Shown: positions 1 to 24,299, numbered from the stretch's first letter. The stretch: DNA of 64,000 nt from Macrostomum lignano (GCA_002269645.1 NIVC01001096.1:124001-188000); one strand, 5' to 3'. Translations and numbers: made by a program. The notes: generated by a model from the letters alone, not told the origin.

Positions 1-860
1 GAGAGAAGGGAGAGGAGAGAAGGGAGAGGAGAGAAGTGAGTGGAGAGAAGGGAGAGAAGAGAAGGGAGAGGAGAGAAGTGAGTGGAGAGAAGGGAGAGGA
101 GAGAAGGGAGAGGAGAGAAGTGAGTGGAGAGAAGGGAGAGGAGAGAAGGGAGAGGAGAGAAGTGAGTGGAGAGAAGGGAGAGGAGAGAAGGGAGAGGAGA
201 GAAGGGAGAGGAGAGAAGGGAGAGGAGAGAAGGGAGAGGAGAGAAGGGAGAGGAGAGAAGGGAGTGGAGAGAAGGGAGAGGAGAGAAGGGAGAGGAGAGA
301 AGTGAGTGGAGAGAAGGGAGAGGAGAGAAGGGAGAGGAGAGAAGGGAGTGGAGAGAAGGGAGAGAAGAGAAGGGAGAGGAGAGAAGTGAGTGGAGAGAAG
401 GGAGAGGAGAGAAGGGAGAGGAGAGAAGGGAGAGGAGAGAAGGGAGAGGAGAGAAGGGAGAGGAGAGAAGGGAGAGGAGAGAAGGGAGTGGAGAGAAGGG
501 AGAGGAGAGAAGGGAGAGGAGAGAAGTGAGTGGAGAGAAGGGAGAGGAGAGAAGGGAGAGGAGAGAAGGGAGTGGAGAGAAGGGAGAGAAGAGAAGGGAG
601 AGGAGAGAAGTGAGTGGAGAGAAGGGAGAGGAGAGAAGGGAGTGGAGAGAAGGGAGAGGAGAGAAGGGAGAGGAGAGAAGGGAGAGGAGAGAAGGGAGAG
701 GAGAGAAGGGAGAGGAGAGAAGGGAGAGGAGAGAAGGGAGAGGAGAGAAGGGAGAGGAGAGAAGGGAGAGGAGAGAAGTGAGTGGAGAGAAGGGAGAGGA
801 GAGAAGGGAGAGGAGAGAAGGGAGAGGAGAGAAGGGAGAGGAGAGAGGAGAGGGGAGAGA
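1..860. repeat. Polypurine minisatellite, 14-bp unit GGAGAGGAGAGAAG, presumably in intron 3 of plastin-like gene 1
   Basis: Near-pure A/G tandem array. It explains the E/R/G ORFs 36-945. Confidence 0.95.
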
Positions 861-929: not shown

Positions 930-2553
930 GTGTGGGACGCCATGATCCCGGATCCGTGCCTTGGAAGCAAGTCAAACTGCAGCAGTTTGTAAACACTGCT
1001 AGACGCAAGTTCAGCATGATTTCGAATTGCGATATAGCGGTTAAAATCGGGGACAAAAACGGGATATCAAAGAATGTCTGCTCGTCAGGCAATATTACGG
1101 CCGGAGAAACCAAGTACATCGCGTCCTTCGTGTTTCTCATGATGCGGCTGCACGCTCAGCTGCTTCGCAAAGGCATCATTGGTGGGCCTAAAAAAGTTGC
1201 GGAACTTGACGACAACGGGTTGACGAAATGGTTCAACGAAAGCATGGAGAAATACGGCAGCACTTTTCGGTTGAAGAGTTTAGAGGTGAGCTCAGTCTTT
1301 TGTATACATTTAGCTGGGTCTGAGCCCAGCTCTGAGCTTTCATCTTATCTGAGTACGGCAAATTTGAGCTGGATCTCAGCTTGCTGACACGGTGTCTGTC
1401 TTAACCAGTAATATCAATCCGAATTAGCTGCACACTAACAACCGCTAAGGGGGCCGGCGACTCAGGCTCGAATTCTTCGGTCTAAATTGGAATCTCGGCT
1501 TGGCTTTGCTCGAGCAATTAACGTCCTTGAAGACCAACCCCAAGGCACAGTGAAGTGTACATGCCGATAACGATAAATAGTTAGGGCCGCTGTACACTCC
1601 TGTGTGAGTGTGCGCCTGTGCGTTTGACTGCGTGCGTAAACGCGCGCTTGTGTGCCTCTGTAGGGAGTCGTCTTAACTGTCGATTGTGTAGTCGGTTCTG
1701 TCGATTGTGTAGTCGGTTCTGTCGGTTGTGTAGTCGGTTCTGTCGATTGTGTAGTCGGTTCTGTCGATTGTGTAGTCGGTTCTGTCGGTTGTGTAGTCGG
1801 TTCTGTCGATTGTGTAGTCGGTTCTGTCGATTGTGTAGTCGGTTCTGTCGATTGTGTAGTCGGTTCTGTCGATTGTGTAGTCGGTTCTGTCGATTGTGTA
1901 GTCGGTTCTGTCGGTTGTGTAGCAAGTTCGCTTAAGCACACAGCCCCCTGCCTCTGATAACAAACTAGCGTCCGCCAAGTCAACTTAAAAACAGCTAGCG
2001 ACCTCCAGATATGTCAAAGGGGATATAATAGTCAGAAATGCCATCTGTCCATGTCTCACTAGACCACAATGGGACAACATGGAATGAAATGTTGGATAAA
2101 AGCTAGTGAAATTATTAACTCCAAATTTCCCAGGATCCGTCGCTAAAGAGCACAAACGCTCTTGGCTACTTTGGCGAGCGAGTCCTAGTTGAGAACAATC
2201 TGTGCTCAAGCGGTCCCGCCGACTTTCCAAGAAAACCGAAAGCCACAGCTAAGAGCGCCAACGCGATCGATATCAGCTTGGCCGACGCCGACGACGAGAC
2301 TGCTGCTCAAGATGAAGCACAGCAGCAGCAATCCGACGCTAACAACTCGGGCGAGGGCGCGTGGCTGTTCAACAGCGTCGAGCAGGTGTCGTCGGATCCG
2401 GCGCTGCTCACAAAGTTCTCGGTGACGGCCATCCTCATGTTCAACAAGGCCGGCGTGATTGTCTATGCCAGCAAGCTGGGACCGGAGACGGACTTGTCGG
2501 TCTATCGGAGCGTCCTGATGGAGCTGAACGCTTTGTCGCTCAAGACCAACTGA
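930..2553 (+). CDS. Plastin/fimbrin-like gene 1, last two exons only (CH3-CH4), with a 1-nt frameshift
   Basis: Exons 930-1285 (cgcag|GTG..GAG|gtgag) and 2134-2553 (cccag|GAT..TGA). Paralogous to genes 2 and 3. Exon 4 is 356 nt versus 357 nt in both paralogs (one C short at 947-949). AATAAA at 2648. The 5' exons lie outside the window. Confidence 0.8.
1455..1670 (+). mobile_element. Dispersed repeat, probable tRNA-derived SINE family B (partial copy)
   Basis: Clearly similar to 10405-10610 (aatctcggcttggct..ccaaggcacagtgaagtgtacatgccg..tgcgcttgtgtg..gggagtcg). Confidence 0.65.
1677..1921. repeat. 21-bp minisatellite CTGTCGATTGTGTAGTCGGTT (~11.5 copies)
   Basis: Period of 21 read directly. 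Lies in intron 4 of gene 1. Confidence 0.95.
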
Positions 2554-2849
2554 CGTGTGATCTGCTCAAGTCTGCTCAAGCCACAGAATCTCTTTGAGTT
2601 CATATATAATTAATACCGAAGGCACCGTTTCAATCGAGCAAATACTAAATAAAAAAGCTTAGTTACTAGCGTGTGCCTAATTCGTGTTGAAAACAACTCA
2701 ATTTAAGTTTTCTTTTTGATTGTTGGCTACACGCAATGATTAATATTTGTTTTTGTTTACTGAACTTTTGACAAGGTGACAGGGTCGCGCCTAACAAGAG
2801 ACAGGGTCCCCCACCATGAGACAGGTGCATCCGCTTGAAGAGAGAGGGG

Positions 2850-3292
2850 CCACCAAGAGTCAGAGTCACCCACCAAGAGTCAGAGTCACCCACCAAGAGT
2901 CAGAGTCACCCACCAAGAGTCAGAGTCACCCACCAAGAGTCAGAGTCACCCACCAAGAGTCAGAGTCACCCACCAAGAGTCAGAGTCACCTACCAAGAGT
3001 CAGAGTCACCCACCAAGAGTCAGAGTCACCTACCAAGAGTCAGAGTCACCCACCAAGAGTCAGAGTCACCTACCAAGAGTCAGAGTCACCCACCAAGAGT
3101 CAGAGTCACCCAACAAGAGTCAGAGTCACCCAACAAGAGTCAGAGTCACCCACCAATAGTCAGAGTCACCCAACAAGAGTCAGAGTCACCCAACAAGAGT
3201 CAGAGTCACCCAACAAGAGTCAGAGTCACCCAACAAGAGTCAGAGTCACCCACCAAGAGTCAGAGTCACCCACCAAGAGTCAGAGTCACTCA
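2850..3292. repeat. 20-bp minisatellite CAGAGTCACCCACCAAGAGT (~22 copies)
   Basis: Period of 20 read directly. Intergenic between genes 1 and 2. Confidence 0.95.
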
Positions 3293-3612
3293 GCAAAGCT
3301 TCTACACTTTTGATCTGTCGATTTGTTTGTCTATGACCTGTTTCTTAAGACAGTTGATTGCAAAGATTGCTCATTAAGTACCAAATTGTATGTTTTGTAC
3401 GAGTATTTCAGTTGTTTTACTAAGCCCCGACACAAGCAATAGCTGGGGCATCAACGGCCATAGAGATCGTGCCGCTGTTACACCAGCCTGTTGGGCCATT
3501 TTAACTACATTGTTTTTCTACGAGCCGTCTAATTAATCGAGCACGCCAAGATTAAGCGCACGGAGCTCGGATTTTAACTGAAGCAATCAATTTGAAGCAT
3601 TCAAGCAACATC

Positions 3613-6398
3613 ATGTCGATAACTAAGGGCTACATCAACGGAAAGTTTATCATGGTTATTGATATTGAATCTAGGAAGGAGGTAAGAATGACTTCGTCCC
3701 TAAGTAAAGTCATACTGAGCTCTGAATTTGATACCGTTTTGCTTTGCTCAACTCGCAGGACGAGCAGGCGAAGGCGCAGCCTCAGCCGCTCACGGAGACC
3801 AGTGTCCGTGAAAAATACGCTTACGACATGTACTGCATGGTGGAGCACTTCAACAGCCTACTCAAAGGTAACTCATTGGCGGCTGGCTTCCTCCCGCTCA
3901 CCGAAGTCAGCGTGTTCTCTCGGATCTACGAAGGCGTTCTACTGTGCGCCTTGGCCAACCTGCTCAAGCCGAACTTTGTGGACGAGAAGAGCGTCGTGGT
4001 GAAAGAGGAGCTGCTCGACAACTCGGCCGACGGGGAGCTGCGCAAGATGGAGAACCGCAACATCGGCATCACGGCGCTCCGGACTCTGGGCGTGTACATG
4101 GACTCCGAAACGGCTGAGTGGATCAAGATGGACACCCCGTTCGAGATGACGGGTCTTCTAGTCCAGGTTCTGAGGCTGGCCACTGTCGGGCGAATGCACT
4201 TTCAGAACTTTGAGATTCTGGTTCACCTGTTCGACGGCTGGTCCGAGCCTGAGGAAGCTGGGTGAGAATGTGGCTCAGGAGTGTCTGAAAAAGTACATCC
4301 TATTGCAACTTCCGTATGATACATGCCAGAGGCATCGGTGAGCTTAAATTAGTGTCCCAACCAGATCAGAGTCTTTTTATCTGTCACAATTGGCAAATTG
4401 TTTTACCGAATCGAATCTAACTATACTACCTCAATGCGATTTTTCTAGCTTGATTCTAGCCACCGACCGTGAGACAATGCTACTAATCTGGATCAATTAT
4501 CAGCTGAAAAAAGCTGGCTCAGACATCAAACTCGCAGATCTTGGTGAAAGTTTGGCTGACTCAAAAGTGTACTCAACACTGTTGTGGACAGTGGCCCCTG
4601 AGGCTCAGCGAGCTTCGCTGACATCCGCTAAAGACATCATGAAGGAGACGGATCTGACCAAGCGAGCCGAGCTTGTCATTGCCAACGCTGAGAAACTGGG
4701 AATTTCCGGCGTGTTGAGGCCTGAGCACATTGCCACAGCTGGGAAACTGGGTATAAGCAACTCAAAAGGATTGCACAACATTGTTCTCAACATGGCTTTT
4801 TTCTATCGCATATTTGCTGCTTATCCCAATATCGATGTACCGAAGATGAAGGACAAACCAGCAGGCAAAGAAGCTGCATCGACCCCGGAGCAGCAGGTAC
4901 AGGAGTCGTGCAAATACGGCGTCTCAGAAGAGACTCTAATCCGCTGGCTGAACTCCTTCGGTCCATCGAGTCCCGTTGTGTCACTGCAAACTGACCTGCG
5001 CAACGGGCGAGTGCTGCTTGAGGTGAGTCACATTGACGAGTCTTGGATTATTACAGAGAATTTTCAGACTCTTTGCTTGGATTCGTTGGGCTTGTCACGT
5101 AATTGTTTCATCCGTTAGGCGTCTCGCCCTCTTCAGAATTCAAAAGATATGGGGACGGAATTGTACGTAGTAGGAGTTTGAATTGTCTGGGATGTACGTG
5201 TACGAGTACAATCGACATGTAATGAAAGGCGTTGCATGTCGATTCTCGTAGCACCTGTACGTCCCTACGAACTTGACGTTTTGCTACGCTGGCATCGAAA
5301 CATAAAACATGATTTTTTCCCACTGCATTCGTTAGGTTTGGGACGCGATGTTTCCCGGCAGTGTTCCGTGGAAAAAAGTGAAGCTTGAACACTTTGAAAT
5401 GTTTGCTAGGCGCAAATTTAACTGGATAGCTAACTGCGACATTGCTATTAGCATCGGCGAGAAGCACGGCATCTCGAAGAATGTCTGCTCGTCTGGTAAC
5501 ATTGCGGCGGGAGAGACCAAGTACATCGCGTCCATGGTGTTTCTCATGATGCGCCTGCACTCTCAGTTAACTAGACAGCGGGCCATCGGCGGATCTAAAA
5601 AAGTTGCCGAACTCGACAACCAAAGTCTGGTGAAGTGGTTCAACGAGAGCATGGAGAAGTACGGGAGCGCATTTCGTCTAAAAACTTTAGAGGTAAGTTG
5701 TCCAACCAACGCGGACCAGGCAAATAAAAATATTGGTTTTATCGATGTGCTTTCATTCACGAATGTCAACTTCAGTCTAGGAAACAGCTTCCCAGAACAT
5801 AATAGGATGTGGATTTGCAAAACAATTACCTATCAACAGGTACATCTACATCTCGTGGCTAAAAAAATAAAATAGTTCCTGGAATTTCAATTGGAATTGC
5901 ATAAATAAATTACAAAATTAAACTTGTGCACACTAAGGCTAATTTGTAACTCACTCGCAATTACCCTTAATCCCCCAGGATCCGTCGCTAAAGAGCACAA
6001 ACGCTCTGGGCTACTTTGGCGAGCGAGTCCTAGTTGAGAACAATCTGTGCTCAAGCGGTCCCGCCGACTTTCCAAGAAAACCGAAAGCCACAGCTAAGAG
6101 CGCCAACGCGATCGATATCAGCTTGGCCGACGCTGACGAAGAGACTGCTGCTCAAGATGAAGCACAGCAGCAGCAATCCGACGCTAACAACTCGGGTGAG
6201 GGCGCATGGCTGTTCAACAGCGTCGAGCAGGTGTCGTCGGATCCGGCGCTGCTCACAAAGTTTTCGGTGACGGCCATCCTCATGTTCAACAAGGCCGGCG
6301 TGATTGTCTATGCCAGCAAGCTGGGACCGGAGACGGACTTGTCGGTCTATCGGAGCGTCCTGATGGAGCTGAACGCTTTGTCGCTCAAGACCAACTGA
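3613..6398 (+). CDS. Plastin/fimbrin-like actin-bundling protein gene 2 (4 CH domains, no EF-hand), 5 exons, 640 aa
   Basis: Exons 3613-3681, 3759-4261, 4449-5022, 5336-5692, 5979-6398. All introns GT-AG, phases 0/2/0/0, total 1923 nt. Plastin-like motifs: GVLLCALANLLKPNFVDEK (CH1), LLIWINYQL..LADSKVY (CH2), EETLIRWLNS..NCDIAISIG (CH3), AILMFNKAGVIVYA (CH4 end). In-frame TAA upstream at 3553, AATAAA at 6529. Confidence 0.88.
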
Positions 6399-7171
6399 CG
6401 TGTGATCTGCTCAAGTCTGCTCAAGCCAGAGAGTCTCTTTGAGTTCATAAAAGCTATCTATTGAGAAAAATTTAAGCTTTATAAAATTGTAAAATGGCAA
6501 AAACTGTCAACAAGCAACATTTCAATTGAATAAAGTTCAACTTAAGTTTTAACAACTAAAAATATCTTCCGCTTCAATTTTAACTGGCTCTTTAGTTAAA
6601 AGGATGCTTGATCCCACCAATATGATGTTGAATCTATTTGCTCAACATAGGTGAACGTGTGGTGACTGCTGTCCGTTCGGAACTCCGGCCTCTGTCACCC
6701 AAGTTTACGGAAATGAGCCATGCAGGGGCTAAAATACACCGGGGATTGTAATGCGCTGACACTACGTACAGATTGCCTATAGTGGCGTTGGGATGAGCAG
6801 AATGAAAAACCTGATCTGGATCCAAAGGTAAAAGACAAGAGAAGACGGAAACATGGTCTGACCAAGCAGCGCCATTATGACGCCTAGAAAACGTTGGGAT
6901 TAAAGATAAATACAAATCGACAAAAAATTCGACAAAAAGTATAATGATCTTTTCAAAAGAATAGTAGGAATTAGCTCTTGACTTACTGAGTTAAAATTTC
7001 TCGCAGTTTTGCGTACTGAAGTAAGTTCATCGTTGTTTATGGTAAAACTTGCTACATCTTGCTTGTGCGTTTTAAAAGGCACTTTTGCAAAGCAAAACCA
7101 TTTTTTTAACAAGCGTAGTTCCACACGCAAACAACTTCACATAATACACTCGGACATCTCAATAAGGCAAA

Positions 7172-10100
7172 ATGGCGACACATGTAAACTTCATCAATGG
7201 AACAACATTTACGCATATTGAAAAAACCATAATAAGAAGCGAGTTTACGGTAAGGAATTGAAAAGGTTTACTTAACGTATATTTATTACGCCTGCATCGT
7301 TTGGGCCAGATGTGCAACCGACAGCTCAGCCGCAGCTATTGCGCGGTGCATGTGAAGGCTGCGTACGGCTGTTCAGTCCAAGGACTGGGGCTGGGGGGTC
7401 GCCACACACCTCAATTACCCCAGCTAATGCTGGCACCCGTTTTACAGCTGTGTGAACTGAAGCAATGCAAAGTTAAGTGTCTTACTTAAGGACACAAATT
7501 GTTCCGAGTGGGATCGGGAATCGAACCCCCGACCTTTCAGTCATGAGTCCGAGGCTCTGACCACTAGGCTAAAACCTCCATGTTTACTGGAGCAAGTGTT
7601 GAATACGAGCTAATATGCAGCAAAGCCATATTTTCAATAACCGAGAAACTAGCACGCGTTAAAGACAATCTAATTTACCCTTTACCTACTGCTTTTTGGC
7701 CCTAATTTCCAGATTTTCATCAATAGTGAAAGTGAGCAGTCCAAGCCCATACCGATCTCGGAAACGATTGTTCGCAAACAATTCGGATTTGACATGGTCT
7801 GCATGGTTGAGCATTTTAACAGAGTGCTGAAGGACATCACTCTGGCAACCAGCTGTGTACCTCTAACTGAGGTGAGCATCTTCTACAAAGCCTACGAAGG
7901 CATCCTGCTCTGCGCTTTGGCCAATCTGCTCAAGCCGGATTCGGTAGACGAAAAAACCATCACCTTGAAACCGGAGCTGCTGGACGATTCGCCAGACGGA
8001 GAGTTGAGAAAAATTGAGAATCGCAATATCGGCATCACAGCCCTGCGCTCTCAGGGTGTCTGCATCAGCAGGCAGTCTGCCGCGATGGTTAATATTCACG
8101 TGCCGTCTACCATTGCGGCTATTCTCGTTCAGGTGCTCCGGCGAGTCACTCTGGGCCGGATGCACTTTCAAAGCTTTGAGGTGTTGGTTCACCTTTTCGA
8201 CGGCTGGTCAAGCGCAGAGGAGGCCAGGTGAGATTGGTAATAAATGTGGCTTCTTCAAGTTTATGTTGATAAAATAGTTCCAATTTTTTTATTTTTCTGA
8301 AACTTGCGTTGGAGACTTATGGGGCACCCAAAATTATAAAAATGCAAAAAAAGTGTAGAAAATTACCTGTACGGTTGATGCAATCACAATTTACTCGATT
8401 CCCTATTCTCTTAATGAGGTTCGGTGAGAAAAAGTTTCTACGAATACATTTTTGAAAGTGTATCCACTAGACTTTTTATCTAATAGCACATGTGCTAGAA
8501 CTTCATTAGGCCAATTAAAGATGAATATTAATATCTACAAATTAATATGCAATTGTCTTTTACGTTCGCTGATAATAGTTTTTCAATTTAGTTATAATGC
8601 ATAGACAGTGCCACGTCACTGTTCGCTTTTTTTAAAAAACTGCCACGTCACGACCGGCTCGATCTTTGCACTACCACTTTCACTGCACCCAGCCAAAGCA
8701 ACGTTCGCAACTTTAAAGCATTTCGCACCTCAAAACCAATTACTGTACAAGGCTAGATTACTAATTCTATTGTATTAAGGCAGTAACAGCACTTGATTTT
8801 GGTAAGCAAATTCATTTAGATAAAGTTATAGAATTCAACCAACTTCTAACATAATTATGTTGACTCTTTGGTGGATTCTCTCTTTTCTCGTGTCGTGGAG
8901 TTACAACCCCTCCCCCCCCCCTATTAGAATTGGAATTTATCAGCACAATCTTGAATAGGTCTCCATGTCTCTATTCAAGTTTATGTTGATAAAATCAATC
9001 CCCATGAAGAATCTCCCCACCCTAAAACCCCCCATTCCCCATGCCCCGGTGGTTGGCTTTAAGCTACATATAATTGGGTTAAAGCTACCTAAAAATGGAG
9101 CTCAAATTTGAAATCAGCACCATCAAAAACCCCTAGAGAGACAAAATTATGATCCTATAAAAATTGAAACTATTTTATCAACATAAACTTGAAGAAGTCC
9201 AATAAATGTTCTACTTGTTTGTATCAGTAGTGCAACTGCATGGCTCTATCGTCAGATAACAAATCTCCCGATGATGCAATCACAATGGTTGTAAAACTCG
9301 CAATCATTCAAACGATGTGCTTTGAATGGAAGCAATCACAACTAGACATTGCCTTACAAAAGACTATCTTCACTTGCTGCATTTTAAACGAATGTATACG
9401 TAGGTTGGTTGGTTTAAAACCGAGAGTGACTGCGTGCAGTGCTTGTATGTGCTCAGGAGCCAGCGGCATGGGCAGAATTGCCTCTACGCTGGTTCTGTAC
9501 TGTAGGTCGACTCTGCTGCAAATAGTTATTATATAAAACCTATAACTCTCAAGCTGCTTCGTTAATTTCTTTATTAAAAAAATCATTCGACACGAATATA
9601 GTTCTCGTTGCCTTCTCTCCCTTTGCTTCAATCTGTGTTGCGTCAGTGCGATTCTGGCTACCGATCGAGAGAAGATGCTGCTGATCTGGATCAATCACCT
9701 GTTGAAAAAGGCCAGCACGGATCTGCAGCTGACTAATCTTGGAGCAAACTTGGCCGACTCAAAAGTGTACTCAATTCTACTCTGGACAGTGGCGCCCGAG
9801 GCTCAGAGAGCTTCGCTAACATCTTCCGAAGACGTCATGAAGGAGACGGATTTGACGAAGCGAGCCGAGCTAGTTGTTGCCAACGCTGAAAAATTGGGCA
9901 TTACCGGGATTTTGAGGCCCGAGCACATTGTGAAAGTTGGCAAAGATTCCGCAATTACCTTTGTAGGCCTGAAGAATATTGTGCTCAATTTGGCATTTCT
10001 GTTTCGCATATTTGTCGCTTACCCGAACATCGATGTGCCCAAGATGAAGGACTTGCCGTCTGCTGCTTCTAAAAAGGCCGCCGCAGTGGCGCCGATGCAG

Positions 10101-12813
10101 CAGGTCAGCAGTCTGGGCAAACACGGCGCCACTGAGGACTCTCTGATCCGCTGGCTGAACTCGTTCGGCCCTTCAAGTCCTGTCGTGTCGCTCAAAACTG
10201 ACCTGTGCAATGGACGAGTGCTGCTTGAGGTTCGTTTCTGTCTGCCTGTGTTTGGTCCTGTAGAGCAAATCCACTCTTTGTTTTTTCTAGGGATCCTTAT
10301 ACCGATCTATACATTCGATAATGGGGAGCCGTAGCCCAGCGGTCCAGCGCGGCTCTCTGCTGTACCAGCGGCCCATAACTCGATTCCAAGTACAGTCAGT
10401 CACATTAACTTCGGGCTAATTTGAAATCTCGGCTTGGCTCTGCTCGTGCAATTCACGCCCTTGAGGGCCAACCCCCCCCCCCCAAGGCACAGTGAAGTGT
10501 ACATGCCGCTTTACACTCCTATGTGTGTGTGTGCCTGTGCGTATGACTGCGTACGTATCCTTGCGCTTGTGTGTGCCTGCTCAGGGGAGTCGGCGGAATG
10601 GGCAGTAATGCCTCTCGCCGGTTGTGTGACAGACTCAAGGCTTGTTGACTACGCCATCAAACGATCGGTAAAAACTTCAGTCAGTACGAGCGTAGTTGTG
10701 ATTTTTATTACTCAATTGATGACGAGTTTGTATATTCTTAATATTAAAAAGTAGGATTACAGAGCTTTAAGTTTAAATACGATACTTGAAGTCGATGTAT
10801 TCGACTAATGGAAGTCACCCAAGGCGAAGGGAGTGACATGCCTGACAGTTAAAAATTCAAGGTCATTGTGCACCCTGTGTGAGCAAGTGTACGAGCGTAT
10901 AAATGTGTGCTTGCGTACAGCATCAGTGCGTGTTTGCAAGCATGACTGCGGGTCGACTGTGGCCTTTGATTTGCGGAAATGGCTACACTGAATGAAGGTC
11001 GGGGGTTCTATTCGGCTGATCCCACTGGATCAATTTGTATCCTTGAGCAAGACACTTCACTCTGCATTGCTTCAGTTCACTCAGCTGTAAAATGGGTGCC
11101 AGCATTAGCTGGGGTAATTGAGGGTGTGTGTGGCGACCCCCCAGTCCTTGGACTGAACAGCCGTACGCAGCCTTCAGATGCGCCACGCAATAGCTGCGGC
11201 TGAGCTGCCGGTTGCGAATCTGGCCATTAGGGCAGGTATAATAAATCATTATGATTATTGACTTCTCTTCGCACCATCGCGCAGGTGTGGGACGCCATGT
11301 TTCCCGGCTGCGTTCCCTGGAACAAGGTCAAGCTTGAAGAGGTAAACCTGAGCTCTAGGCGAAAATTCACCTGGATGGCCAACTGCGACATTGCTATTGG
11401 CATCGGGCAGAAACATGGCATCACCAGGGACGTCTGCTCTTCTGGCAACATCTCTACCGGTGAGGTAAAGTACATCGCTTCAATGGTGTTCCTCATGATG
11501 CGCCTGCACGCCCAGCTGACTCGCAAGGAGATCATCGGCGAAGACAGCAAAGTTGCCGATTTAGACGATAAAGGGCTGGTTAAATGGTTCAACGAAATGA
11601 TGGAGAAATATCGCAGCGACTTCCGACTGAAGAGTGTTGATGTAAGTTTGAGTAAAAGTAGGGCTTTTGGTTCTGGATTCCCCAAATGTCACATTCCCCA
11701 AATGTCACATTCCCCAAGTGTCACATTCCCCAAATGTCACATTCCCCAAATGTCACATTCCACAAATGTCACACTCCCCAAATGTCACACTCCCCAAATG
11801 TCACACTCCCCAAATGTCACACTCCCTAAATGCCCCATTCCCCAAATGTCACACTCCCCAAATGTGACATTCGCCAAATGCCCCATTCCCCAAATGTCAC
11901 ACTCCCCAAATGTCACACTCCCCAAATGTCACACTCCCCAAATGTCACACTCTCCAAATTTCACACTCCCCAAATGTCACACTCCCTAAATGCCCCATTC
12001 CCCAAATGTCACACTCCCCAAATGTGACATTCGCCAAATGCCCTATTCCCCAAATGTCACACTCCCCAAATGTCACACTCCCCAAATGTCACACTCTCCA
12101 AATGTCACACTCTCCAAATGTCACACTCCCCAAATGTCACACTCCCCAAATGTCACACTCCCCAAATGTCACACTTCCCAAATATGTCACACTCCCCAAA
12201 TGCCCCATTTCCCAAATGTAAAAAATCGAACCCCGGCGCACTCTTCATTGCCCTGCAAACTCAGGATCCCAATCTTAAAAACACCAACGCGCTGGGCTAC
12301 TTCGGCGAACGAATCCTGGTTGAGAACAACCTGTTGTCAAGCGGTCCGGCCGATTTTCCAAGAAAACCAAAGGTCGCAGAGGCAGCGAAGAAGCCGGCAG
12401 CAGCCGCAGGCGCCGCAGGCAAGCGAACGCCGCCGCCAGTTGCGCCGAAACCGAAGATGCCGGCAAAGATGCCGCCAAAGAGTAAAAATGCAGCCGACAG
12501 CAACGCGGAAGAGGACGACGGAGCTAATAATGAGGAGCCGGCGGCTACGAATGACGACAACGGAGAGGAGGAGGAGCAGCAGACGCCAGCTGAAGCGCAC
12601 AACTCCGGCGGTGGCGCTTGGCAATTCAACAGCGTCGAACAGGTGTCGTCGGACCCGGCGCTTCTGACGACATTCTCCGTAACTGCCATCCTGATGTTCA
12701 GCAAGGCAGGGGTCATTGTCTACGCTAGCAAGCTGGGACCGGAGACAGATGCAGCCGTGTACAGAAGTGTCTTGATGGAGTTGAACGGTTTGTCAATGAA
12801 AACCTGCAATTGA
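7172..12813 (+). CDS. Plastin/fimbrin-like gene 3 (4 CH domains, no EF-hand), 5 exons, 693 aa
   Basis: Exons 7172-7249, 7713-8227, 9647-10229, 11285-11641, 12265-12813. Same intron phases as gene 2, total 2082 nt. Exon 1 MATHVNFINGTTF.. resembles gene 2 exon 1 MSITKGYINGKF. AATAAA at 12932. Confidence 0.87.
7280..7579 (-). mobile_element. tRNA-derived SINE family A with a CORE-like central domain
   Basis: On the minus strand: A box TAGCCTAGTGG, B box GGTTCGATTCC, then GTGTCCTTAAGTAAGACACTTAAC..CTTCAGTTCACACAGCTGTAAAACGGG. Related copies at 10980-11245 (+) and 42781-42890 (-). Confidence 0.85.
10323..10625 (+). mobile_element. Probable tRNA-derived SINE family B
   Basis: A-box-like TAGCCCAGCGG and B-box-like ACTCGATTCC. 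Body shared with 1455-1670. Confidence 0.65.
10980..11245 (+). mobile_element. SINE family A copy (degenerate head)
   Basis: Matches the reverse complement of 7280-7560 over more than 200 bp. Confidence 0.85.
11680..12225. repeat. 16-bp minisatellite CCCCAAATGTCACACT filling intron 4 of gene 3
   Basis: Period of 16. The intron spans 11642-12264. Confidence 0.95.
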
Positions 12814-13080
12814 CACCGCAAGCCTGCTGTGGGATCATTTATGTTTCAAAATCATCCATTGTGTAGAAGTAACATTGGTACATAACTGCATAATGACGCG
12901 TCTTGCTAAGCAACAAGCTGGCATGTCAGGTAATAAATTTTTGTTTTTCTAGTCTGATGCCGGATCATTTTTGACAACAATGGCCAATGCAGGATGCAGG
13001 CAAAAATACACGGAAACCTACTATATAATAATTTAGAAAAATATGAAGCCAAGTTCATCATTTCATACGATTTGAATGCC

Positions 13081-13114: not shown

Positions 13115-13287
13115 TGTAGTAACTGAGTCAGAGGCCGTGTTTGCTGTGTAGCCAAACTCTTACAAATCTCGCCGCGCTGGGCACGCGTCTATATATTATG
13201 GAGTTAGAATTGGGGTGGCGGTACCCACCCCACTCCGCAGCCAATCAGACTGCCCGGGCGTACCATACTGTGCGTACGCACACTACA
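13115..13287 (-). repeat. 3' LTR (173 bp)
   Basis: Direct repeat of 17550-17722, preceded on the minus strand by the PPT. Confidence 0.97.
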
Positions 13288-13512
13288 TCTCTCCCCTTTC
13301 GAATAGAGACTGAGAGAGAAGAAAATCGATTTAAACGTAACTCGAAAATACAAAGTTCGAAAGATTCACCGATGATGCGCATTGAAAATGGAGATTAAAA
13401 TATTGAGGAAATAAAATATTTGAATTGAATGCAGCAAAAACGTAAAAAAACTTCAGTCCGCATATTACGGAAAAGAAAGCCAGTTAATTTCGGTCATTGC
13501 AGGATTTCAAAT

Positions 13513-16500
13513 TCAGTCCTTGTAGATTTTCACGCCCGCCCGAGCAGCGCGGGGGTGCGGGCGCAGCGCCACGGGGGAGGCGGGTGGATCTCGGGCCGCC
13601 TCGCCCGAAGCTCTCGGTGCAGCGGTCTGCGTCTGGGCGCCGGCGTCGGCCAAGTCGGGGCTGACGACTTTGACCGCCGTGCAGTGCCGCCAGCAGGTCG
13701 TGCCGTCCCGGCGTAGCAGCAGCGAGTTGCCGGCCACCCGCTGGACTGTCCAGGCACCGCTCTCGAATGGCGTCTGCGTCTTGCTGGCACCGACCCACCG
13801 TCGTAGCACCGAGTCGCCGACCTGGACGTCGTGCCGCCGTGGTCGCCTTTTTGCGTCCGCGTGCTGCTTCATCGCCGCCTTGGCGCCAGCGTCGGCTTCT
13901 CTCAGCCGCTGCTCGTTGATGCGGACTCGCTGGGACGGCCGGGCGGCGGGGATGATGTCGTTTGGCCGCCGGCCCATCAGCAGCTCGGCTGGTGCGCGCC
14001 CGGTGGCCGTGTGCGGCGTGTTCCTGTAGGCCAGCAGCCACTCGTCCAGAGCGGCCCTCCAGTCCCGCCGCTCCTCGATGGCTGCTCGCACGACTTTGTT
14101 GATGGAGCGGTTCAGTCGCTCTGTCATGCCGTTGGCCGCTGGGTAGTAGGGCGTGATGAGGCGGTGCTTGATCCCGTAGCTCGCCAGGAACCGGCCGAAC
14201 TCCTTGGACGAGAAAGGTGGTCCATTATCTGTCACGAGCTCCTGTGGGATCCCGAAGCGGGCGAACATCTCTCGCAGGCGGGGAATCAATGCCTCGGCCG
14301 TCGTCGTCTGCATGAGCTGCACCTCCGGAAACCTTGAGTAGCGGTCCACGCACACCAGCAGCATGTTGTTGTTGATGGGTCCCACGAAATCGGCGCCGAT
14401 CGACAGCCAGGCGCCCGCGGGGATCGGCGTCGGCTGCAGAGGCGTGGCCCGGACGGCTGGCGTGTGCGACGTGACGGCGCAGCTGCGGCATCGACTGACG
14501 AATTCCTCCGCTTGAGTTGCCATCCTCGGCCACCATACCTTCGTGCAGAGTCTGGCGATCGTCTTCTGCGAGCACTGGTGCCCTTGATGCGCTAATTCGA
14601 GCATCTGCTGCCGCAGATCAGCTGGCACGACGATTCGGTGGTGTCGAAGGAGGACCCCGTCAACCGCAGACAGCTCCTCTCGCAGCGCGTGGAGCGAGCG
14701 CATCTCGGGGTTGGAGCGATCCCACCGACCGCCTTGCGTCGCCGCTATCGCCGCCCGGATGACTGTGTCGCTGGCAGAGCTCTTGCGGATGTCTTGGAGT
14801 GTCAGCGCCATCGGCACAGCCGCCTGCGCTACCTCGTTGATGTAGGCCTCCCTCCGCTGCTCGCCAAAACTTCCGTCGTGCTCGCTTAGGGGCTGCCTGC
14901 TGAGTACATCTGCAGCATTGGAGGCTCCCGGCTGATACTCGACCTTGAACACTAGGTGCTGGATCCTCAGCGCCATTCGCTCGACTCGTGGAGGCGGGCG
15001 CGACCCAGGCGCGAACATGGCCGTCAGCGGCTTGTGATCAGAGACCACTGTGAACTGGGGCGATCCATGCAGGTAGTACTCAAACTTCAGGCAGCCGAAC
15101 TTCACGGCGAGTGCCTCTTTCTCGGTCTGCGAATATCGCCGCTCGACATCGGAGAGGGTCCGGCTGGCGTATGCGACCGGCCTCGAGCTGCCGTCGCGCT
15201 GCACCTGCGCCAGGATGGCGCCCAGTCCGGTCGGCCCCGCGTCCACAATCAGCTGCGTGTGTAGCCGCTTGTCGTAAAAAGCCAGCGTTGTCGGCTCCGC
15301 GATGCTGCGCTTCAGCTGCTCAAAGGCGCTGGCCTGGTCGGCGCCCCACTGCCAGTCGACGGTCTTCCTGGTCAGGCGCCGCAGCGGCTCCGCCACCTTG
15401 GCCAGCTGTGGCGTGAACACGGCGAGGTAGTTCACGAGGCCTAGGAATGAGCGAAGCTGCCCAATCGACTCGGGCTCCTTGAAGTCTTGAACGGCGGCGA
15501 CCTTGCTCTCCGTGGCCTGGACCCCTTCCGCCGTGAGCCGCATTCCCATGAACTCGATGCTGCTGCGCGCCAGTCGGCATTTCCGAGCGTTCAGCGTGAT
15601 GCCATGCTGCGCCAGGCGGGCCAGACATGCCTCGAGGCTGCTGTTGTGCTCCGCCATCGTGCGGCCGAACACGACCACGTCGTCGTGGATCCATTTGACG
15701 TTGGGCAGGCCAGCCAGCACTCGACTCATCACATTCTGCAGGATCTCCTGGGAGGTGGACAGGCCCATGCACAGCCGGGTGAGACGGCGAAGCCCGCGAG
15801 GCGTCGAGAATGTTAGCAGGTTGCGGCATTTCTCGGCGACAGGCACCTGGTAGAACGCCTTCGCGATGTCCAGCTCTGAGAACACAGTGCTGCCAGCCAT
15901 GTCCCCGGTCACCTCCTCGAAAGTCGGAATCTGGTGTCGCTCGCGGATGACAAAGCGGTTGACATCGCGGAGGTCCTGCGTGATGCGCACCTCGCCCGGC
16001 TCCTTCTTGGGCACGACGACCATCCGCGCGACCCACGGCGCCGGGCCGTCGACGGGCTCAATGATCCCGAGCTGCTCTAACAACTGCAGTTCCTTGTCCA
16101 CCGCGTCTGCCAGGTGGATCGGCACCTTCGAAGGCGCATGGCAGACCGGGCGGGCGCTGTCGGTGAGGTGGATGTCGGCAGGCGGCCCGGTGAAGCAGCC
16201 GATTCCGCTGAACACGCTGGCGTGCTTGCGCAGCACCCTGCCGATGTCCTCGACGTGTCCTTGAGGCACTCCGCTGGATCTCGTGCCGCTGAGAAGGCCA
16301 TCGACCGCCGCCTCCGCTTCAGCGACCTGCAGCACCTGCTGTCCGGCTGTCGGTGGTGGCCCGACCCGCAGGATGTCCATCTGAGTGGCCGTCTGCCTGC
16401 CGATGATGGTGATGCCTCTCCCTTCGACGACGTGGAACGTGGCGACTGCCTGCCGGCCGAAAATGCGGACGTCCATCGCCGCCTTGCCCAGCAGCTGCAT

Positions 16501-17517
16501 CGGCCTGTCCGACCCGTACGCGAACAGCCTGTCCGAGGTGGTCTGCAGGTGCGGCCGCTGTCTCAGACTCTCGAACGTGGCCCGGTTGATCACATTTCGA
16601 GCCGCACCGCTGTCGATCAACACCGACAGTCTGGAGCCGTTGATCTCGGCTATTGTGTGGGCCGACTGCTCACCCTGATCGACCTCGAACACGCCGGAGT
16701 CCGGGTGGTCCACCTTCTGGTAGCTGGTCTCGCCTTGCAGCGTTGCGACGGCGTCGGCGCCGCTCTGCGGGGCGCCCTGCTTGGACCTGCAGGCTCGCGC
16801 GAAGTGGCCCGGCTTCCCGCACTTTCTGCAGCTCTTGCCCTGCGCTGCGGTGCACGTGGGGTGCCCTGGCCTGCCGCAGCGATCGCACGATACGTGCTGC
16901 GTTGGTGTCTGCGGCATCTGTGGCTTCTGGTCTCTTCTGACTGCTGCGAGCTGCTGCGGTTCCCCTGGTCTGTCGCTCTCCATCGCGGTGGCCTGCTGCT
17001 CCGCGGCTTCTTTCGCCCTCGCCTTTTTGAGCACATCTGCCAGGGAGATATTGTTGGTCTGCAAGAAGTCTCTCCTGAGTCTCTCAGATTCGCAGTAGGC
17101 GACGATTTTGTCACGGATCAGCGAGTCTCTGAGGGTCCCGAACTCACACTGCTCCGCCGCCTTGCGCAGACGCTGATACCACTGGTCGATCTGCTCGCCA
17201 GGCTGCTGTCTGCAGGTCTCAAACTTGAAACGCAGGAACACAATGTTATTCTTCCCGTCCCAGAACGCCTGGATGTTTTTCGCGAGGCTGCTGTAGTCCT
17301 CTCCAGAGGCGATCTCGTTCTCTTCGACTACAGCCTGCAGCTCCTCTCCTGCGGCGTACAGCAGCAGCTGCTGCCCTCGAGTCTTGTCGGTGATTCCAGC
17401 TGCATTGATGTACGTGGCGAAGCGACGAGTCCATGCAGTCCAGCGCTGTGCTGTGGAGTGGCAGTCGCTATCGATTGTAAACGGCCCGGGTGGCGCGAGT
17501 GAAATTTGCTGAGTCAT
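13513..17517 (-). CDS. gag-pol: Gag-Pol polyprotein, 1334 aa, uninterrupted
   Basis: Zn knuckles CDRCGRPGHPTC and CRKCGKPGHFARAC; protease LIDSGA; RT FSELDIAKAFYQ..WIHDDVVV; RNase H DAGPTGLGAIL..EKEALA..SDHKPL; integrase HHCC plus D(GADFVGP)-D(TDNGPPF)-E(GMTER). Confidence 0.97.
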   Translation of the reverse strand: MTQQISLAPPGPFTIDSDCHSTAQRWTAWTRRFATYINAAGITDKTRGQQLLLYAAGEELQAVVEENEIASGEDYSSLAKNIQAFWDGKNNIVFLRFKFETCRQQPGEQIDQWYQRLRKAAEQCEFGTLRDSLIRDKIVAYCESERLRRDFLQTNNISLADVLKKARAKEAAEQQATAMESDRPGEPQQLAAVRRDQKPQMPQTPTQHVSCDRCGRPGHPTCTAAQGKSCRKCGKPGHFARACRSKQGAPQSGADAVATLQGETSYQKVDHPDSGVFEVDQGEQSAHTIAEINGSRLSVLIDSGAARNVINRATFESLRQRPHLQTTSDRLFAYGSDRPMQLLGKAAMDVRIFGRQAVATFHVVEGRGITIIGRQTATQMDILRVGPPPTAGQQVLQVAEAEAAVDGLLSGTRSSGVPQGHVEDIGRVLRKHASVFSGIGCFTGPPADIHLTDSARPVCHAPSKVPIHLADAVDKELQLLEQLGIIEPVDGPAPWVARMVVVPKKEPGEVRITQDLRDVNRFVIRERHQIPTFEEVTGDMAGSTVFSELDIAKAFYQVPVAEKCRNLLTFSTPRGLRRLTRLCMGLSTSQEILQNVMSRVLAGLPNVKWIHDDVVVFGRTMAEHNSSLEACLARLAQHGITLNARKCRLARSSIEFMGMRLTAEGVQATESKVAAVQDFKEPESIGQLRSFLGLVNYLAVFTPQLAKVAEPLRRLTRKTVDWQWGADQASAFEQLKRSIAEPTTLAFYDKRLHTQLIVDAGPTGLGAILAQVQRDGSSRPVAYASRTLSDVERRYSQTEKEALAVKFGCLKFEYYLHGSPQFTVVSDHKPLTAMFAPGSRPPPRVERMALRIQHLVFKVEYQPGASNAADVLSRQPLSEHDGSFGEQRREAYINEVAQAAVPMALTLQDIRKSSASDTVIRAAIAATQGGRWDRSNPEMRSLHALREELSAVDGVLLRHHRIVVPADLRQQMLELAHQGHQCSQKTIARLCTKVWWPRMATQAEEFVSRCRSCAVTSHTPAVRATPLQPTPIPAGAWLSIGADFVGPINNNMLLVCVDRYSRFPEVQLMQTTTAEALIPRLREMFARFGIPQELVTDNGPPFSSKEFGRFLASYGIKHRLITPYYPAANGMTERLNRSINKVVRAAIEERRDWRAALDEWLLAYRNTPHTATGRAPAELLMGRRPNDIIPAARPSQRVRINEQRLREADAGAKAAMKQHADAKRRPRRHDVQVGDSVLRRWVGASKTQTPFESGAWTVQRVAGNSLLLRRDGTTCWRHCTAVKVVSPDLADAGAQTQTAAPRASGEAARDPPASPVALRPHPRAARAGVKIYKD

Positions 17518-17549
17518 GATTTTTAAAGGTTCAGTTCTTGCGACGCCAT

Positions 17550-17722: not shown

Positions 17723-18306
17723 GGAGCTAATAATGAGGAGCCGGCGGCTACGAATGACGACAACGGAGAGGAGGAGGAGCAGCAGACGCCAGCTGAAGCG
17801 CACAACTCCGGCGGTGGCGCTTGGCAATTCAACAGCGTCGAACAGGTGTCGTCGGACCCGGCGCTTCTGACGACATTCTCCGTAACTGCCATCCTGATGT
17901 TCAGCAAGGCAGGGGTCATTGTCTACGCTAGCAAGCTGGGACCGGAGACAGATGCAGCCGTGTACAGAAGTGTCTTGATGGAGTTGAACGGTTTGTCAAT
18001 GAAAACCTGCAATTGACACCGCAAGCCTGCTGTGGGATCATTTATGTTTCAAAATCATCCATTGTGTAGAAGTAACATTGGTACATAACTGCATAATGAC
18101 GCGTCTTGCTAAGCAACAAGCTGGCATGTCAGGTAATAAATTTTTGTTTTTCTAGTCTGATGCCGGATCATTTTTGACAACAATGGCCAATGCAGGATGC
18201 AGGCAAAAATACACGGAAACCTACTATATAATAATTTAGAATTGTATGAAGCCAAGTTCATCATTTCATACGATTTGAATGCCTGACTGACTGACTGACT
18301 GACTGA
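17723..18306 (+). pseudogene. Duplicated 3' part of plastin-like gene 3 (end of exon 5, stop, 3'UTR, polyA signal)
   Basis: Copy of 12520-13103 at a constant offset of 5203. The only non-microsatellite difference seen is AAA (13039-13041) versus TTG (18242-18244). Confidence 0.92.

Positions 18307-19384: not shown

Positions 19385-24299
<4,915 letters not shown>

What the first reader, a model, noticed from the sequence alone, without database searches (positions are those of the whole stretch)
930..12813. Tandem family of EF-hand-less, highly divergent plastin/fimbrin paralogs
At least three head-to-tail genes share intron positions and the four-CH layout. Both complete copies start with a 23-26-aa exon carrying a shared (Y/F)ING motif and go straight into CH1, so there is no EF-hand headpiece. 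Animal plastins are normally regulated by Ca2+ through N-terminal EF-hands (established). Inference: a lineage-specific expansion of Ca2+-insensitive actin bundlers, perhaps for a specialised actin structure.
Basis: partly seen in the sequence, partly recalled or inferred. Interest (0 to 1): 0.8.

Follow-up and report, generated by a model that had tools for sequence, protein, structure and literature searches.

The report
Headpiece-less divergent fimbrin gene array, flatworm
The window holds the end of a tandem array of Macrostomum lignano (flatworm) genes encoding very diverged fimbrin/plastin-type proteins that keep the four-CH core but have no calcium-binding EF-hand headpiece, an undescribed variant of a well-known protein family.

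Summary
Two intact five-exon genes on the + strand (3613-6398, 640 aa; 7172-12813, 693 aa) share all intron positions and phases. A third copy (930-2553) is cut by the window start and carries a frameshift.

The sequence is Macrostomum lignano. The same locus in assembly Mlig_3_7 has transcript-based gene models of exactly 640 and 693 aa. There the array has six head-to-tail members, so the window shows only its 3' end.

Sequence search, two AlphaFold models and Foldseek all place the proteins in the fimbrin/plastin four-CH core. No EF-hand is encoded anywhere in the window. CH1 starts after about 45-52 residues, against 109-138 in canonical fimbrins.

A distant ortholog on an intronless contig, with an in-frame stop before its ATG, also lacks the headpiece and shares the N-terminal "ΦING" motif. 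About half of the near-universal fimbrin residues are replaced, including the ABD2 actin-contact loop.

dN/dS is 0.15, so the genes are functional. A sister paralog is testis- and germline-specific. Ca2+-independent actin cross-linking is plausible but untested.

The parts
930..1285 (+). g0 exon 4 (rest of CH3 and start of CH4). Belongs to a copy whose exons 1-3 lie upstream of the window. A 1-nt deletion near 946 shifts the frame, so this is a probable pseudogene.
   Evidence: alignment with g1, g2 and the Mlig_3_7 copy. In one search, L001 shows g0 exons 1-3 upstream. The L001 copy carries different lesions: 5-, 13- and 13-nt deletions in exon 4 and a frameshift in exon 2.
2134..2553 (+). 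g0 last exon (rest of CH4 with the loop insertion, plus stop). It is 98% identical in DNA to g1's last exon.
   Evidence: dS 0.05 against g1 here, but about 2 in exon 4, so the gene is a mosaic, probably from gene conversion.
3613..3681 (+). g1 exon 1: 23 aa, MSITKGYINGKFIMVIDIESRKE, carrying the clade-specific ΦING N-terminal motif.
   Evidence: In-frame TAA 60 nt upstream. The same motif is present in paralogs A, C and g2 and in ortholog P0008.
3759..4261 (+). g1 exon 2: linker, CH1 and the CH1-CH2 connector.
4449..5022 (+). g1 exon 3: CH2, the ABD1-ABD2 linker and the start of CH3.
5336..5692 (+). g1 exon 4: rest of CH3 and the first helix of CH4.
5979..6398 (+). g1 exon 5: rest of CH4, including a disordered insertion of about 50 aa (residues 529-575), plus stop.
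   Evidence: 55 residues where canonical fimbrins have 4.
7172..7249 (+). g2 exon 1: 26 aa, MATHVNFINGTTFTHIEKTIIRSEFT.
   Evidence: In-frame TAA 9 nt upstream with no AG in between. Matches the annotated BOX15_Mlig006537g3.
7713..8227 (+). g2 exon 2: linker and CH1.
9647..10229 (+). g2 exon 3: CH2, linker and the start of CH3.
11285..11641 (+). g2 exon 4: rest of CH3 and the start of CH4.
12265..12813 (+). g2 exon 5: rest of CH4 with a disordered insertion of about 90-100 aa (Pro/Lys/Ala-rich, then acidic; residues 541-627), plus stop.
17723..18016 (+). Orphan duplicate of the last 294 nt of g2's coding sequence, ending at the stop codon (18014-18016). It is 100% identical to 12520-12813; the identical stretch continues 6 nt further, to 18022 (= 12819). 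It lies directly after the 3' LTR of a retrotransposon.
   Evidence: The same junction appears in the chimeric UniRef model A0A1I8F182.

Best explanation
The window contains the 3' end of a tandem, same-strand array of Macrostomum lignano genes. The array has six members in assembly Mlig_3_7. The genes arose by old duplications of a fimbrin/plastin gene and have diverged strongly.

Each intact product (g1 640 aa, g2 693 aa) keeps the monomeric four-CH actin-cross-linking core: ABD1 = CH1-CH2 and ABD2 = CH3-CH4, packed as in the fimbrin crystal structures. Three features set the clade apart:
1. There is no EF-hand/calmodulin-binding regulatory headpiece. CH1 is preceded by only 45-52 residues. 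These begin with a conserved Φ-I-N-G-x-x-Φ motif encoded by a small first exon.
2. A long, disordered, paralog-specific low-complexity insertion sits in one loop of CH4.
3. About half of the residues that are near-invariant in other fimbrins are replaced.

Proposed mechanism (inferred, not shown): the protein binds F-actin through its ABDs and probably cross-links it. It lacks the headpiece through which Ca2+ inhibits bundling in vertebrate plastins, so it cannot be switched off by Ca2+ in that way. Control would instead come from tissue-specific expression, probably in the male germline, and perhaps from the N-terminal motif and the CH4 loop.

g1 and g2 are functional genes under purifying selection. 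g0 is a recently broken copy.
For: Shown:
- Exact gene models with shared intron positions and phases.
- The same locus in GCA_002269645.1 carries products of 640 and 693 aa. That annotation is built wholly from RNA-seq and transcript assemblies (PMC5730564).
- phmmer against PDB: Arabidopsis fimbrin 1.8e-36, S. pombe fimbrin 1.6e-33 and plastin-3 2.5e-27, each aligned from CH1 into CH4. Filamin reaches only 2e-3.
- AlphaFold2: pLDDT 81 / pTM 0.82 for g1 and 79 / 0.79 for g2. Only the N-terminus and the CH4 loop are disordered.
- Foldseek top hits are 1pxy and 1rt8, E about 1e-16 to 1e-15, TM (normalised to target) 0.60-0.69.
- No EF-hand: no Pfam EF-hand hit at E<=1; no PS00018 loop in any frame of the 64 kb and no loose loop pattern in either intergenic spacer; no tblastn match to a plastin headpiece.
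- In-frame stops lie 9 nt (g2, no AG between) and 60 nt (g1) upstream of the ATGs.
- Residues before the CH1 anchor: 45, 52, 59 and 89 in the clade, against 109-138 in the 22 comparison fimbrins that have a full N-terminus.
- Ortholog P0008 sits on a 2155-nt contig with an uninterrupted ORF and an in-frame TGA before its ATG. It has no EF-hand and the motif AELINGVTIF.
- The ΦING motif is also in the first exons of paralogs A and C.
- dN/dS for g1 against g2 is 0.15 at dS 1.35.
- The clade is monophyletic in 200/200 NJ bootstraps.

Lead for tissue: paralog Mlig000473.g1, in the same array, is classed 'Testis' and 'germline_FACS'. Read counts are 9 in the head fragment and 326, 217 and 193 in the three progressively longer fragments (Brand et al. 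2020, PMC7336406, Tables S6/S8).

Established knowledge: Ca2+ binding to the EF-hands inhibits bundling by human plastins (PMC7244493).
Against: - No biochemical or localisation data exist for these proteins.
- The ABD2 loop that contacts actin in plastin-2/3 is FSLVGIGG from plants to humans. Here it reads ISKNVCSS (g1) or ITRDVCSS (g2). The position of PLS3 Leu478 is Lys/Arg here, and the L478P mutation abolishes PLS3 bundling (PMC7244493).
- Only 49 of 94 near-invariant fimbrin columns are kept in both g1 and g2 (11/24 in CH1, 4/14 in CH4).
- The large CH4 loop could hinder ABD2. So F-actin cross-linking may be weakened, altered or lost.
- Expression data were found only for a paralog, not for the two genes in the window. 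The stored supplementary tables are truncated before Mlig006537.
- AlphaFold gives no confident structure for the N-terminal motif.
- Alternative isoforms that skip exon 1 cannot be excluded from DNA alone.
Confidence: 0.6

Rival explanations
1. Neofunctionalised CH scaffold. The proteins keep the fimbrin fold but no longer cross-link actin. For example, only one ABD may still bind, or the CH domains may bind another partner. The disordered CH4 loop and the N-terminal motif would then provide the real, male-germline-specific function.
For: The ABD2 actin-contact loop is replaced, with Lys/Arg at the Leu478-equivalent position. Only 49 of 94 near-invariant fimbrin columns are kept, and CH1 and CH4 are the most eroded. 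Each paralog has a different long low-complexity insert in the same CH4 loop: acidic/Gln-rich in g1, basic Pro/Lys then acidic in g2, about 560 aa of decapeptide repeats in B, and polyproline/Ser-rich in A. The replaced residues are themselves conserved within the clade.
Against: The compact four-CH core is predicted with high confidence and matches the fimbrin cores. Many core signature residues persist, such as W205/N207, N415/C416, W357 and N359. CH3 and CH2 are the best conserved domains. Purifying selection acts over all exons.
Confidence: 0.3
2. Gene-model artefact. The real transcripts carry additional upstream exons that encode the EF-hand headpiece, and the short first exons are mis-called.
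For: DNA alone cannot prove a transcription start. M. lignano uses trans-splicing and polycistronic precursors (PMC5730564), so 5' ends are hard to call.
Against: Independent transcript-based annotation gives the same 640- and 693-aa ORFs. The intergenic spacers are only 1059 and 773 nt and hold no EF-hand-like ORF. No PS00018 loop occurs in any frame of the 64 kb. There is no tblastn hit to a plastin headpiece. In-frame stops lie just upstream of both ATGs and of paralogs A, B and C. The first-exon motif is conserved across five paralogs and a 36%-identical ortholog. That ortholog's intronless contig has an in-frame stop before its ATG.
Confidence: 0.05
3. The array is a set of decaying, non-functional duplicates in a repeat-rich, partly polyploid genome.
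For: g0 is broken in both assemblies, by different lesions. An orphan exon fragment sits next to a young LTR element. The locus is full of minisatellites.
Against: g1 and g2 have intact ORFs in two assemblies. dN/dS is 0.15 with saturated dS. Canonical splice sites are preserved. The gene models are transcript-derived. A paralog has strong, tissue-specific read counts.
Confidence: 0.05

Closest known systems
Canonical animal plastins/fimbrins (human PLS1, LCP1, PLS3; e.g. Lingula plastin-2; Mesocestoides corti fimbrin A0A5K3ERM3)
   Same: One polypeptide with four CH domains forming two actin-binding domains in a compact core. They are the best sequence and structure matches. The flatworm fimbrin is the most frequent NJ sister, in 85 of 200 replicates.
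   Different: Canonical proteins have a regulatory headpiece of about 110-125 aa (two EF-hands plus a calmodulin-binding motif) before CH1, and 4 residues in the CH4 loop. The window genes have 45-52 residues before CH1 and 55-97 in that loop. Identity is only 22-28%, against about 58-60% between animal phyla. The ABD2 actin loop is replaced.
Ca2+-insensitive fimbrins of yeast, plants and Tetrahymena (Sac6/Fim1, AtFIM1/5, Tetrahymena fimbrin)
   Same: These are fimbrin cores that bundle actin without Ca2+ control (PMC10533516; PMC10046292). This is the behaviour predicted for the window genes.
   Different: Yeast and plant fimbrins still possess the headpiece fold, which simply does not bind Ca2+. 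From my own memory, not checked here, the Tetrahymena protein was reported to lack EF-hand motifs; it is a ciliate protein with no specific relationship to this clade. None is known to carry the ΦING motif or the CH4 insertion.
Engineered RD-truncated (ΔRD) plastin-3 core
   Same: An ABD1-ABD2 core without the regulatory domain. This is the architecture the flatworm genes have naturally (PMC7244493).
   Different: It is a laboratory construct with the canonical actin-binding surfaces intact. The natural flatworm proteins have remodelled surfaces and extra disordered segments.
Two-CH actin-binding domains of alpha-actinin, filamin, spectrin, dystrophin and plectin
   Same: The same CH fold. They appear as weaker Foldseek and phmmer matches.
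   Different: They have only one tandem CH pair followed by rod or repeat domains. The window proteins have two pairs and nothing else. E-values are about 30 orders of magnitude weaker.

Membership tests
Fimbrin/plastin family | Four CH domains in one chain, arranged as two tandem-CH actin-binding domains with no rod or repeat region. | tested here: met
   Pfam CH hits (three stretches; CH4 is split by the insert). phmmer alignments run from CH1 into CH4 of 1pxy and 1rt8. AlphaFold models show four CH helical bundles.
Fimbrin/plastin family | Closest homologs are fimbrins/plastins rather than other CH proteins. | tested here: met
   PDB search: fimbrin/plastin 1e-16 to 1e-36, filamin 2e-3. In the search of 1.84 billion representatives, the hits I identified or inspected outside the clade were fimbrin-type, for example Populus fimbrin-1, Mesocestoides fimbrin, Myxobolus and a plastin-1 cluster.
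Fimbrin/plastin family | Compact ABD1-ABD2 core fold as in the crystal structures 1pxy and 1rt8. | tested here: met
   Foldseek 1pxy_B E=1.3e-16 (TM to target 0.66) and 1rt8 E=6.8e-15 (TM to target 0.69), over about 600 aligned columns. pTM is 0.82. This rests on predicted structure only.
Fimbrin/plastin family | [quoted passage not shown] | tested here: not met
   No EF-hand Pfam hit at E<=1 on the full proteins or the isolated N-termini. No EF-hand loop pattern in the window. Only 45-52 residues precede CH1. Stops lie upstream of the ATGs. I therefore file these genes as a headpiece-less offshoot of the family, not as canonical plastins.
Fimbrin/plastin family | Conserved ABD2 (CH3) actin-contact loop, PLS3 474-483 (FSLVGIGG) with its hydrophobic cluster. 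| tested here: not met
   The loop reads ISKNVCSS (g1) or ITRDVCSS (g2). The Leu478-equivalent position is Lys/Arg and the Ile481-equivalent is Cys. Lingula, Populus and Mesocestoides sequences from the database show the same canonical loop.
Fimbrin/plastin family | F-actin binding and bundling activity. | not testable with these tools
   Needs co-sedimentation or microscopy with recombinant protein.
Ca2+-regulated animal plastins (PLS1/2/3 type) | Bundling inhibited by Ca2+ through the EF-hand headpiece. | not testable with these tools
   The structural prerequisite, the headpiece, is absent (see above). Actual Ca2+ insensitivity was not measured.
Alpha-actinin/filamin/spectrin-type ABD proteins | A single tandem CH pair followed by spectrin, filamin or plakin repeats. 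| tested here: not met
   There are two CH pairs and no repeat domains. Matches to these proteins cover one ABD only.

The most novel reading that the evidence does not exclude
A Macrostomum-lineage, male-germline-specific subfamily of headpiece-less fimbrins. The conserved N-terminal ΦING element replaces Ca2+ control, and the hypervariable disordered CH4-loop inserts give each tandem paralog a different partner or material property. Examples of these inserts are polyproline in paralog A, decapeptide repeats in B, and acidic or basic tracts in g1 and g2. Together the paralogs would build or shape the unusual actin-dependent structures of spermatids or sperm, and the family would evolve fast under sexual selection.
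Probability: 0.25. Interest if true: 0.6.

Novelty: new variant of a known kind. Interest (0 to 1): 0.45.

Why it matters
The headpiece is retained in the vast majority of fimbrins even where it no longer binds Ca2+ (PMC10533516). A natural animal lineage that has deleted it entirely, while keeping the four-CH core under purifying selection, therefore acts as a natural experiment on what the regulatory domain is for. The same applies to how much of the canonical actin-binding surface can change.

The paralog-specific disordered inserts in one CH4 loop, the tandem expansion and the testis link fit the known fast evolution of reproduction-related genes in Macrostomum.

M. lignano has RNAi, in situ hybridisation and transgenesis, so the hypothesis is directly testable. 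It is a modest, family-level finding rather than a new kind of system.

Tried and rejected
1. Canonical plastin in M. lignano. I spent the last word-indexed search on an annelid-type plastin (P0158). The 120 rows listed held no flatworm sequence. Whether M. lignano also has a canonical, headpiece-bearing plastin is therefore undetermined.
2. Expression of Mlig006537. There were no full-text hits. The supplementary tables of PMC5816591, PMC7336406 and PMC12896417 are truncated in storage or lack the identifier. Only paralog Mlig000473.g1 was found.
3. Species of ortholog P0008. The sample is SRR30276804 and its taxon is not available here. A search seeded with P0008 found no close relatives. 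P0162 looked headpiece-less from its Pfam hits but has a degenerate EF-hand on inspection, so I rejected it as a clade member.
4. Origin of the clade. The NJ tree leaves the sister group unresolved: Mesocestoides 85/200, Myxobolus 62/200, both long branches. An animal or flatworm origin is the parsimonious reading but is not demonstrated. The first tree script timed out.
5. Pfam on the isolated N-terminal peptides gave nothing. AlphaFold gives the N-terminus low confidence, so the structure and role of the ΦING motif remain unknown. A resemblance to the plastin switch helix was considered and dropped as too weak.
6. Rfam and tRNA scans of the window found nothing.
7. Horizontal transfer was considered because plant and yeast fimbrins score slightly better than human plastin-3. 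I rejected it as unsupported. The score differences are small, the genes have spliceosomal introns and host repeats, and the bootstraps favour animal long branches.


Full report
**1. What is in the sequence**

- g1 has five exons: 3613-3681, 3759-4261, 4449-5022, 5336-5692 and 5979-6398. They give 1923 nt and 640 aa.
- g2 has five exons: 7172-7249, 7713-8227, 9647-10229, 11285-11641 and 12265-12813. They give 2082 nt and 693 aa.
- All introns are GT-AG. Intron phases are 0, 2, 0, 0 in both genes, and the junctions fall at the same aligned residues.
- The first exons encode 23 and 26 residues and carry YING and FING.

A third copy, g0, is represented by exon 4 (930-1285) and the last exon (2134-2553). 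Its exon 4 is 356 nt instead of 357. A single-base deletion near 946 breaks the frame.

tblastn also found a duplicate of the last 294 nt of g2's coding sequence at 17723-18016. The perfect identity extends to 18022, 300 nt in all.

**2. Source and independent annotation**

The proteins match Macrostomum lignano, a free-living flatworm. The 693-aa protein is about 98-99% identical, by tblastn of its exons, to BOX15_Mlig006537g3.

The protein look-up returned contig NIVC01001909.1 of assembly GCA_002269645.1 (Mlig_3_7). There the same locus is 98.3% identical over 8.2 kb. It carries called genes with products of 300, 640 and 693 aa, followed by an MFS transporter and an RrnaAD methyltransferase gene, as in the window.

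That annotation was made entirely from RNA-seq and transcript assemblies, with gene ends set by trans-splicing and poly(A) reads (PMC5730564). The 640- and 693-aa ORFs are therefore transcript-supported and not just my splicing by eye.

A second look-up on the same contig shows the array is larger than the window. Six same-strand members lie in about 34 kb:
- A, 898 aa.
- B, Mlig000473g1, 1174 aa.
- C, 642 aa.
- g0, g1 and g2.

The window begins inside intron 3 of g0.

g0 is a C-like copy. In Mlig_3_7 it carries 5-, 13- and 13-nt deletions in exon 4 and a frameshift in exon 2. In the window it instead carries the 1-nt deletion. It is best read as a recently inactivated copy. Its exon 4 still shows dN/dS of about 0.08 against g1.

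g0 and g1 are mosaics. They are nearly identical in exons 1-2 (99.4% DNA) and in the last exon (dS 0.05), but old in exons 3-4 (dS about 2). This points to gene conversion or unequal exchange within the array.

**3. Family assignment**

- Pfam finds CH domains (E=2e-29 and 6e-26).
- phmmer against all PDB sequences gives Arabidopsis fimbrin 1.8e-36, S. pombe fimbrin 1.6e-33, plastin-3 2.5e-27 and LCP1 4e-18. The alignments run from CH1 into CH4. Filamin is the next family at 2e-3.
- AlphaFold2 with a 42-49-sequence alignment gives confident models. g1 has pLDDT 81 and pTM 0.82. g2 has pLDDT 79 and pTM 0.79.
- Foldseek against the PDB returns the fimbrin cores 1pxy and 1rt8 first, at E about 1e-16 to 1e-15 and TM (normalised to target) 0.60-0.69 over about 600 columns.

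**4. Absence of the EF-hand headpiece**

- No EF-hand family is hit at E<=1 on the whole proteins, the isolated N-termini, paralog P0004 or ortholog P0008.
- The PROSITE EF-hand loop pattern occurs in no frame of the whole 64 kb. A loose version is absent from the two intergenic spacers of 1059 and 773 nt.
- In a common alignment, the CH1 anchor is preceded by 45 (g1), 52 (g2), 59 (B) and 89 (P0008) residues. The 22 comparison fimbrins with a full N-terminus have 109-138. Three unnamed sequences of 527-534 aa have only 17-29 and may be partial.
- In-frame stops lie 9 nt upstream of the g2 ATG, with no AG between, and 60 nt upstream of the g1 ATG. For A, B and C the distances are 30, 18 and 87 nt.

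The strongest independent evidence is P0008. It is the only protein outside M. lignano that falls between the family (E<=1e-160) and ordinary fimbrins (E>=1e-56) in an exhaustive HMMER search of 1.84 billion cluster representatives.
- It is encoded by an uninterrupted ORF (nt 29-2047) on a 2155-nt contig from run SRR30276804.
- It has an in-frame TGA at nt 11-13, before the ATG.
- It has no EF-hand.
- It carries AELINGVTIFDSERK near its N-terminus.

The same Φ-I-N-G-x-x-Φ element begins the first exons of A (DVINGWKIV), C (GFINGRFIT), g0/g1 (GYINGKFIM) and g2 (NFINGTTFT). B has a degenerate MMVGNAQKI. The little first exon is therefore coding and constrained, and it is a hallmark of the clade.

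**5.

(a) CH4 loop insertion. The last exon encodes most of CH4. A loop that has 4 residues in all 25 canonical sequences compared has 55 (g1), 97 (g2), 57 (P0008), about 575 (B, decapeptide DAKKTSGTQL repeats) or about 270 residues (A, long polyproline and Ser/Gly/Lys tracts). AlphaFold leaves exactly this segment, and the first 20-32 residues, unstructured.

(b) Divergence is extreme. Identity to any canonical fimbrin is 22-28%, while an annelid-type plastin is about 58-60% identical to plastins of other animal phyla. Of 94 columns that are near-invariant in canonical fimbrins, only 49 are kept in both g1 and g2: 11/24 in CH1, 17/25 in CH2, 14/24 in CH3 and 4/14 in CH4.

(c) The ABD2 actin loop is replaced. 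The CH3 loop that contacts actin in the plastin-2 cryo-EM structure contains the Leu whose L478P mutation abolishes PLS3 bundling (PMC7244493). It is FSLVGIGG from plants to humans. Here it is ISKNVCSS or ITRDVCSS, with Lys/Arg at the Leu position. The replacement is itself conserved within the clade.

**6. Are the genes functional, and where?**

g1 against g2 gives dN/dS 0.15 with dS 1.35. Exons 2-5 each give 0.09-0.18. Exon 1 is too short to be informative. The duplication is therefore old and both copies are under purifying selection.

I could not find data for Mlig006537 itself. In the re-annotation by Brand et al. 2020, its array neighbour Mlig000473.g1 is classed 'Testis' and 'germline_FACS'. 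In the positional dataset the fragment cut anterior to the testes has 9 reads, and the three progressively longer fragments have 326, 217 and 193 (PMC7336406, Tables S6/S8). This is a lead for the family, not evidence for g1 or g2.

**7. Mechanism**

Shown: homology and predicted fold of a complete fimbrin core, absence of the regulatory domain, a conserved N-terminal motif, a disordered CH4 insert, and purifying selection.

From established knowledge: in vertebrate plastins, Ca2+ bound by the EF-hands inhibits bundling by acting on ABD2. Fimbrins of yeast, plants and Tetrahymena bundle without Ca2+ control. The headpiece is nevertheless retained in the vast majority of fimbrins.

Inferred: the flatworm proteins bind and probably cross-link F-actin, and cannot be regulated by Ca2+ through a headpiece.

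My estimates:
- Membership of the fimbrin-core lineage: about 0.95.
- Headpiece-less: about 0.9.
- Still cross-links actin: about 0.55.
- g1 and g2 expressed mainly in the male germline: about 0.5.

The main rival is neofunctionalisation of the scaffold, at about 0.3.

**8. Origin and novelty**

The clade (g1, g2, B, P0008) is monophyletic in 200/200 NJ bootstraps. Its sister is unresolved: a cestode fimbrin in 85 replicates and a myxozoan in 62, both long branches.

The cestode fimbrin keeps a headpiece-length N-terminus of about 110 aa but has no Pfam EF-hand hit. Headpiece erosion may therefore have begun earlier in flatworms.

I could not determine whether M. lignano also retains a canonical plastin.

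I found no paper describing headpiece-less animal plastins or these genes. The database names are 'hypothetical protein' and 'CH domain-containing protein'.

I rate this a new variant of a known kind. It would interest actin and flatworm-reproduction specialists and is testable in a tractable model, but it is not a new type of system.

Noticed in passing
window 13115-17722: Young LTR retrotransposon. It has identical 173-nt LTRs (13115-13287 and 17550-17722) and an intact 1334-aa gag-pol ORF on the minus strand (13513-17517). It is absent from the Mlig_3_7 contig, so it is an insertion polymorphism or a difference between genome copies.
   Followed up: partly
window 12520-12819 and 17723-18022: A perfect 300-nt direct duplication of the 3' end of g2's last exon brackets the retrotransposon and about 300 nt of flank. 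This is far too long for a target-site duplication. UniRef A0A1I8F182 is a chimeric model that joins an ORF on the + strand inside the retroelement (antisense to its gag-pol), this exon fragment and the MFS transporter. The arrangement therefore exists in another assembly, but its origin (real duplication or assembly of two haplotypes) is unexplained.
   Followed up: partly
window 1-860, 1677-1922, 2850-3289, 11679-12219: Four long minisatellites with periods of 14, 21, 20 and 16 nt lie in the introns and spacers of the array. Each gives long spurious ORFs in several frames.
   Followed up: partly
window 7305-7536 and 10989-11259: An inverted pair of a dispersed repeat of about 230-270 nt sits in intron 1 and intron 3 of g2. 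ARAGORN and Rfam report nothing there.
   Followed up: partly
L005 3841-22486 and L001 (contig NIVC01001909.1, about 47.4-81.5 kb): Three further family members lie upstream of the window. A (898 aa) has a polyproline/Ser-rich CH4 insert. B (Mlig000473g1, 1174 aa) has about 560 aa of DAKKTSGTQL repeats and is annotated as testis/germline. C (642 aa) is an intact g0-like copy.
   Followed up: partly
g0 versus g1: window 2129-2604 = 5974-6449; L001 1-990 = window 3269-4259: Neighbouring paralogs are mosaics. Their 5' ends (promoter region, exons 1-2) and last exons are 98-99% identical, while their middle exons have saturated synonymous divergence. This indicates gene conversion or unequal crossing-over within the array.
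   Followed up: partly
window about 19000-24300 (+), 26305-28823 (-), 31300-41142 (-): Downstream genes are an MFS-type transporter, an RrnaAD (rRNA adenine dimethylase-like) gene and large coiled-coil ORFs. They are interspersed with very long low-complexity tandem repeats, for example at 33150-36750 and 54460-56140. None was studied further.
   Followed up: no
P0017 (Mesocestoides corti fimbrin, not in the window): This canonical-length cestode fimbrin has an N-terminal region of about 110 aa that gives no Pfam EF-hand hit. Headpiece degeneration may therefore be wider among flatworms.
   Followed up: no
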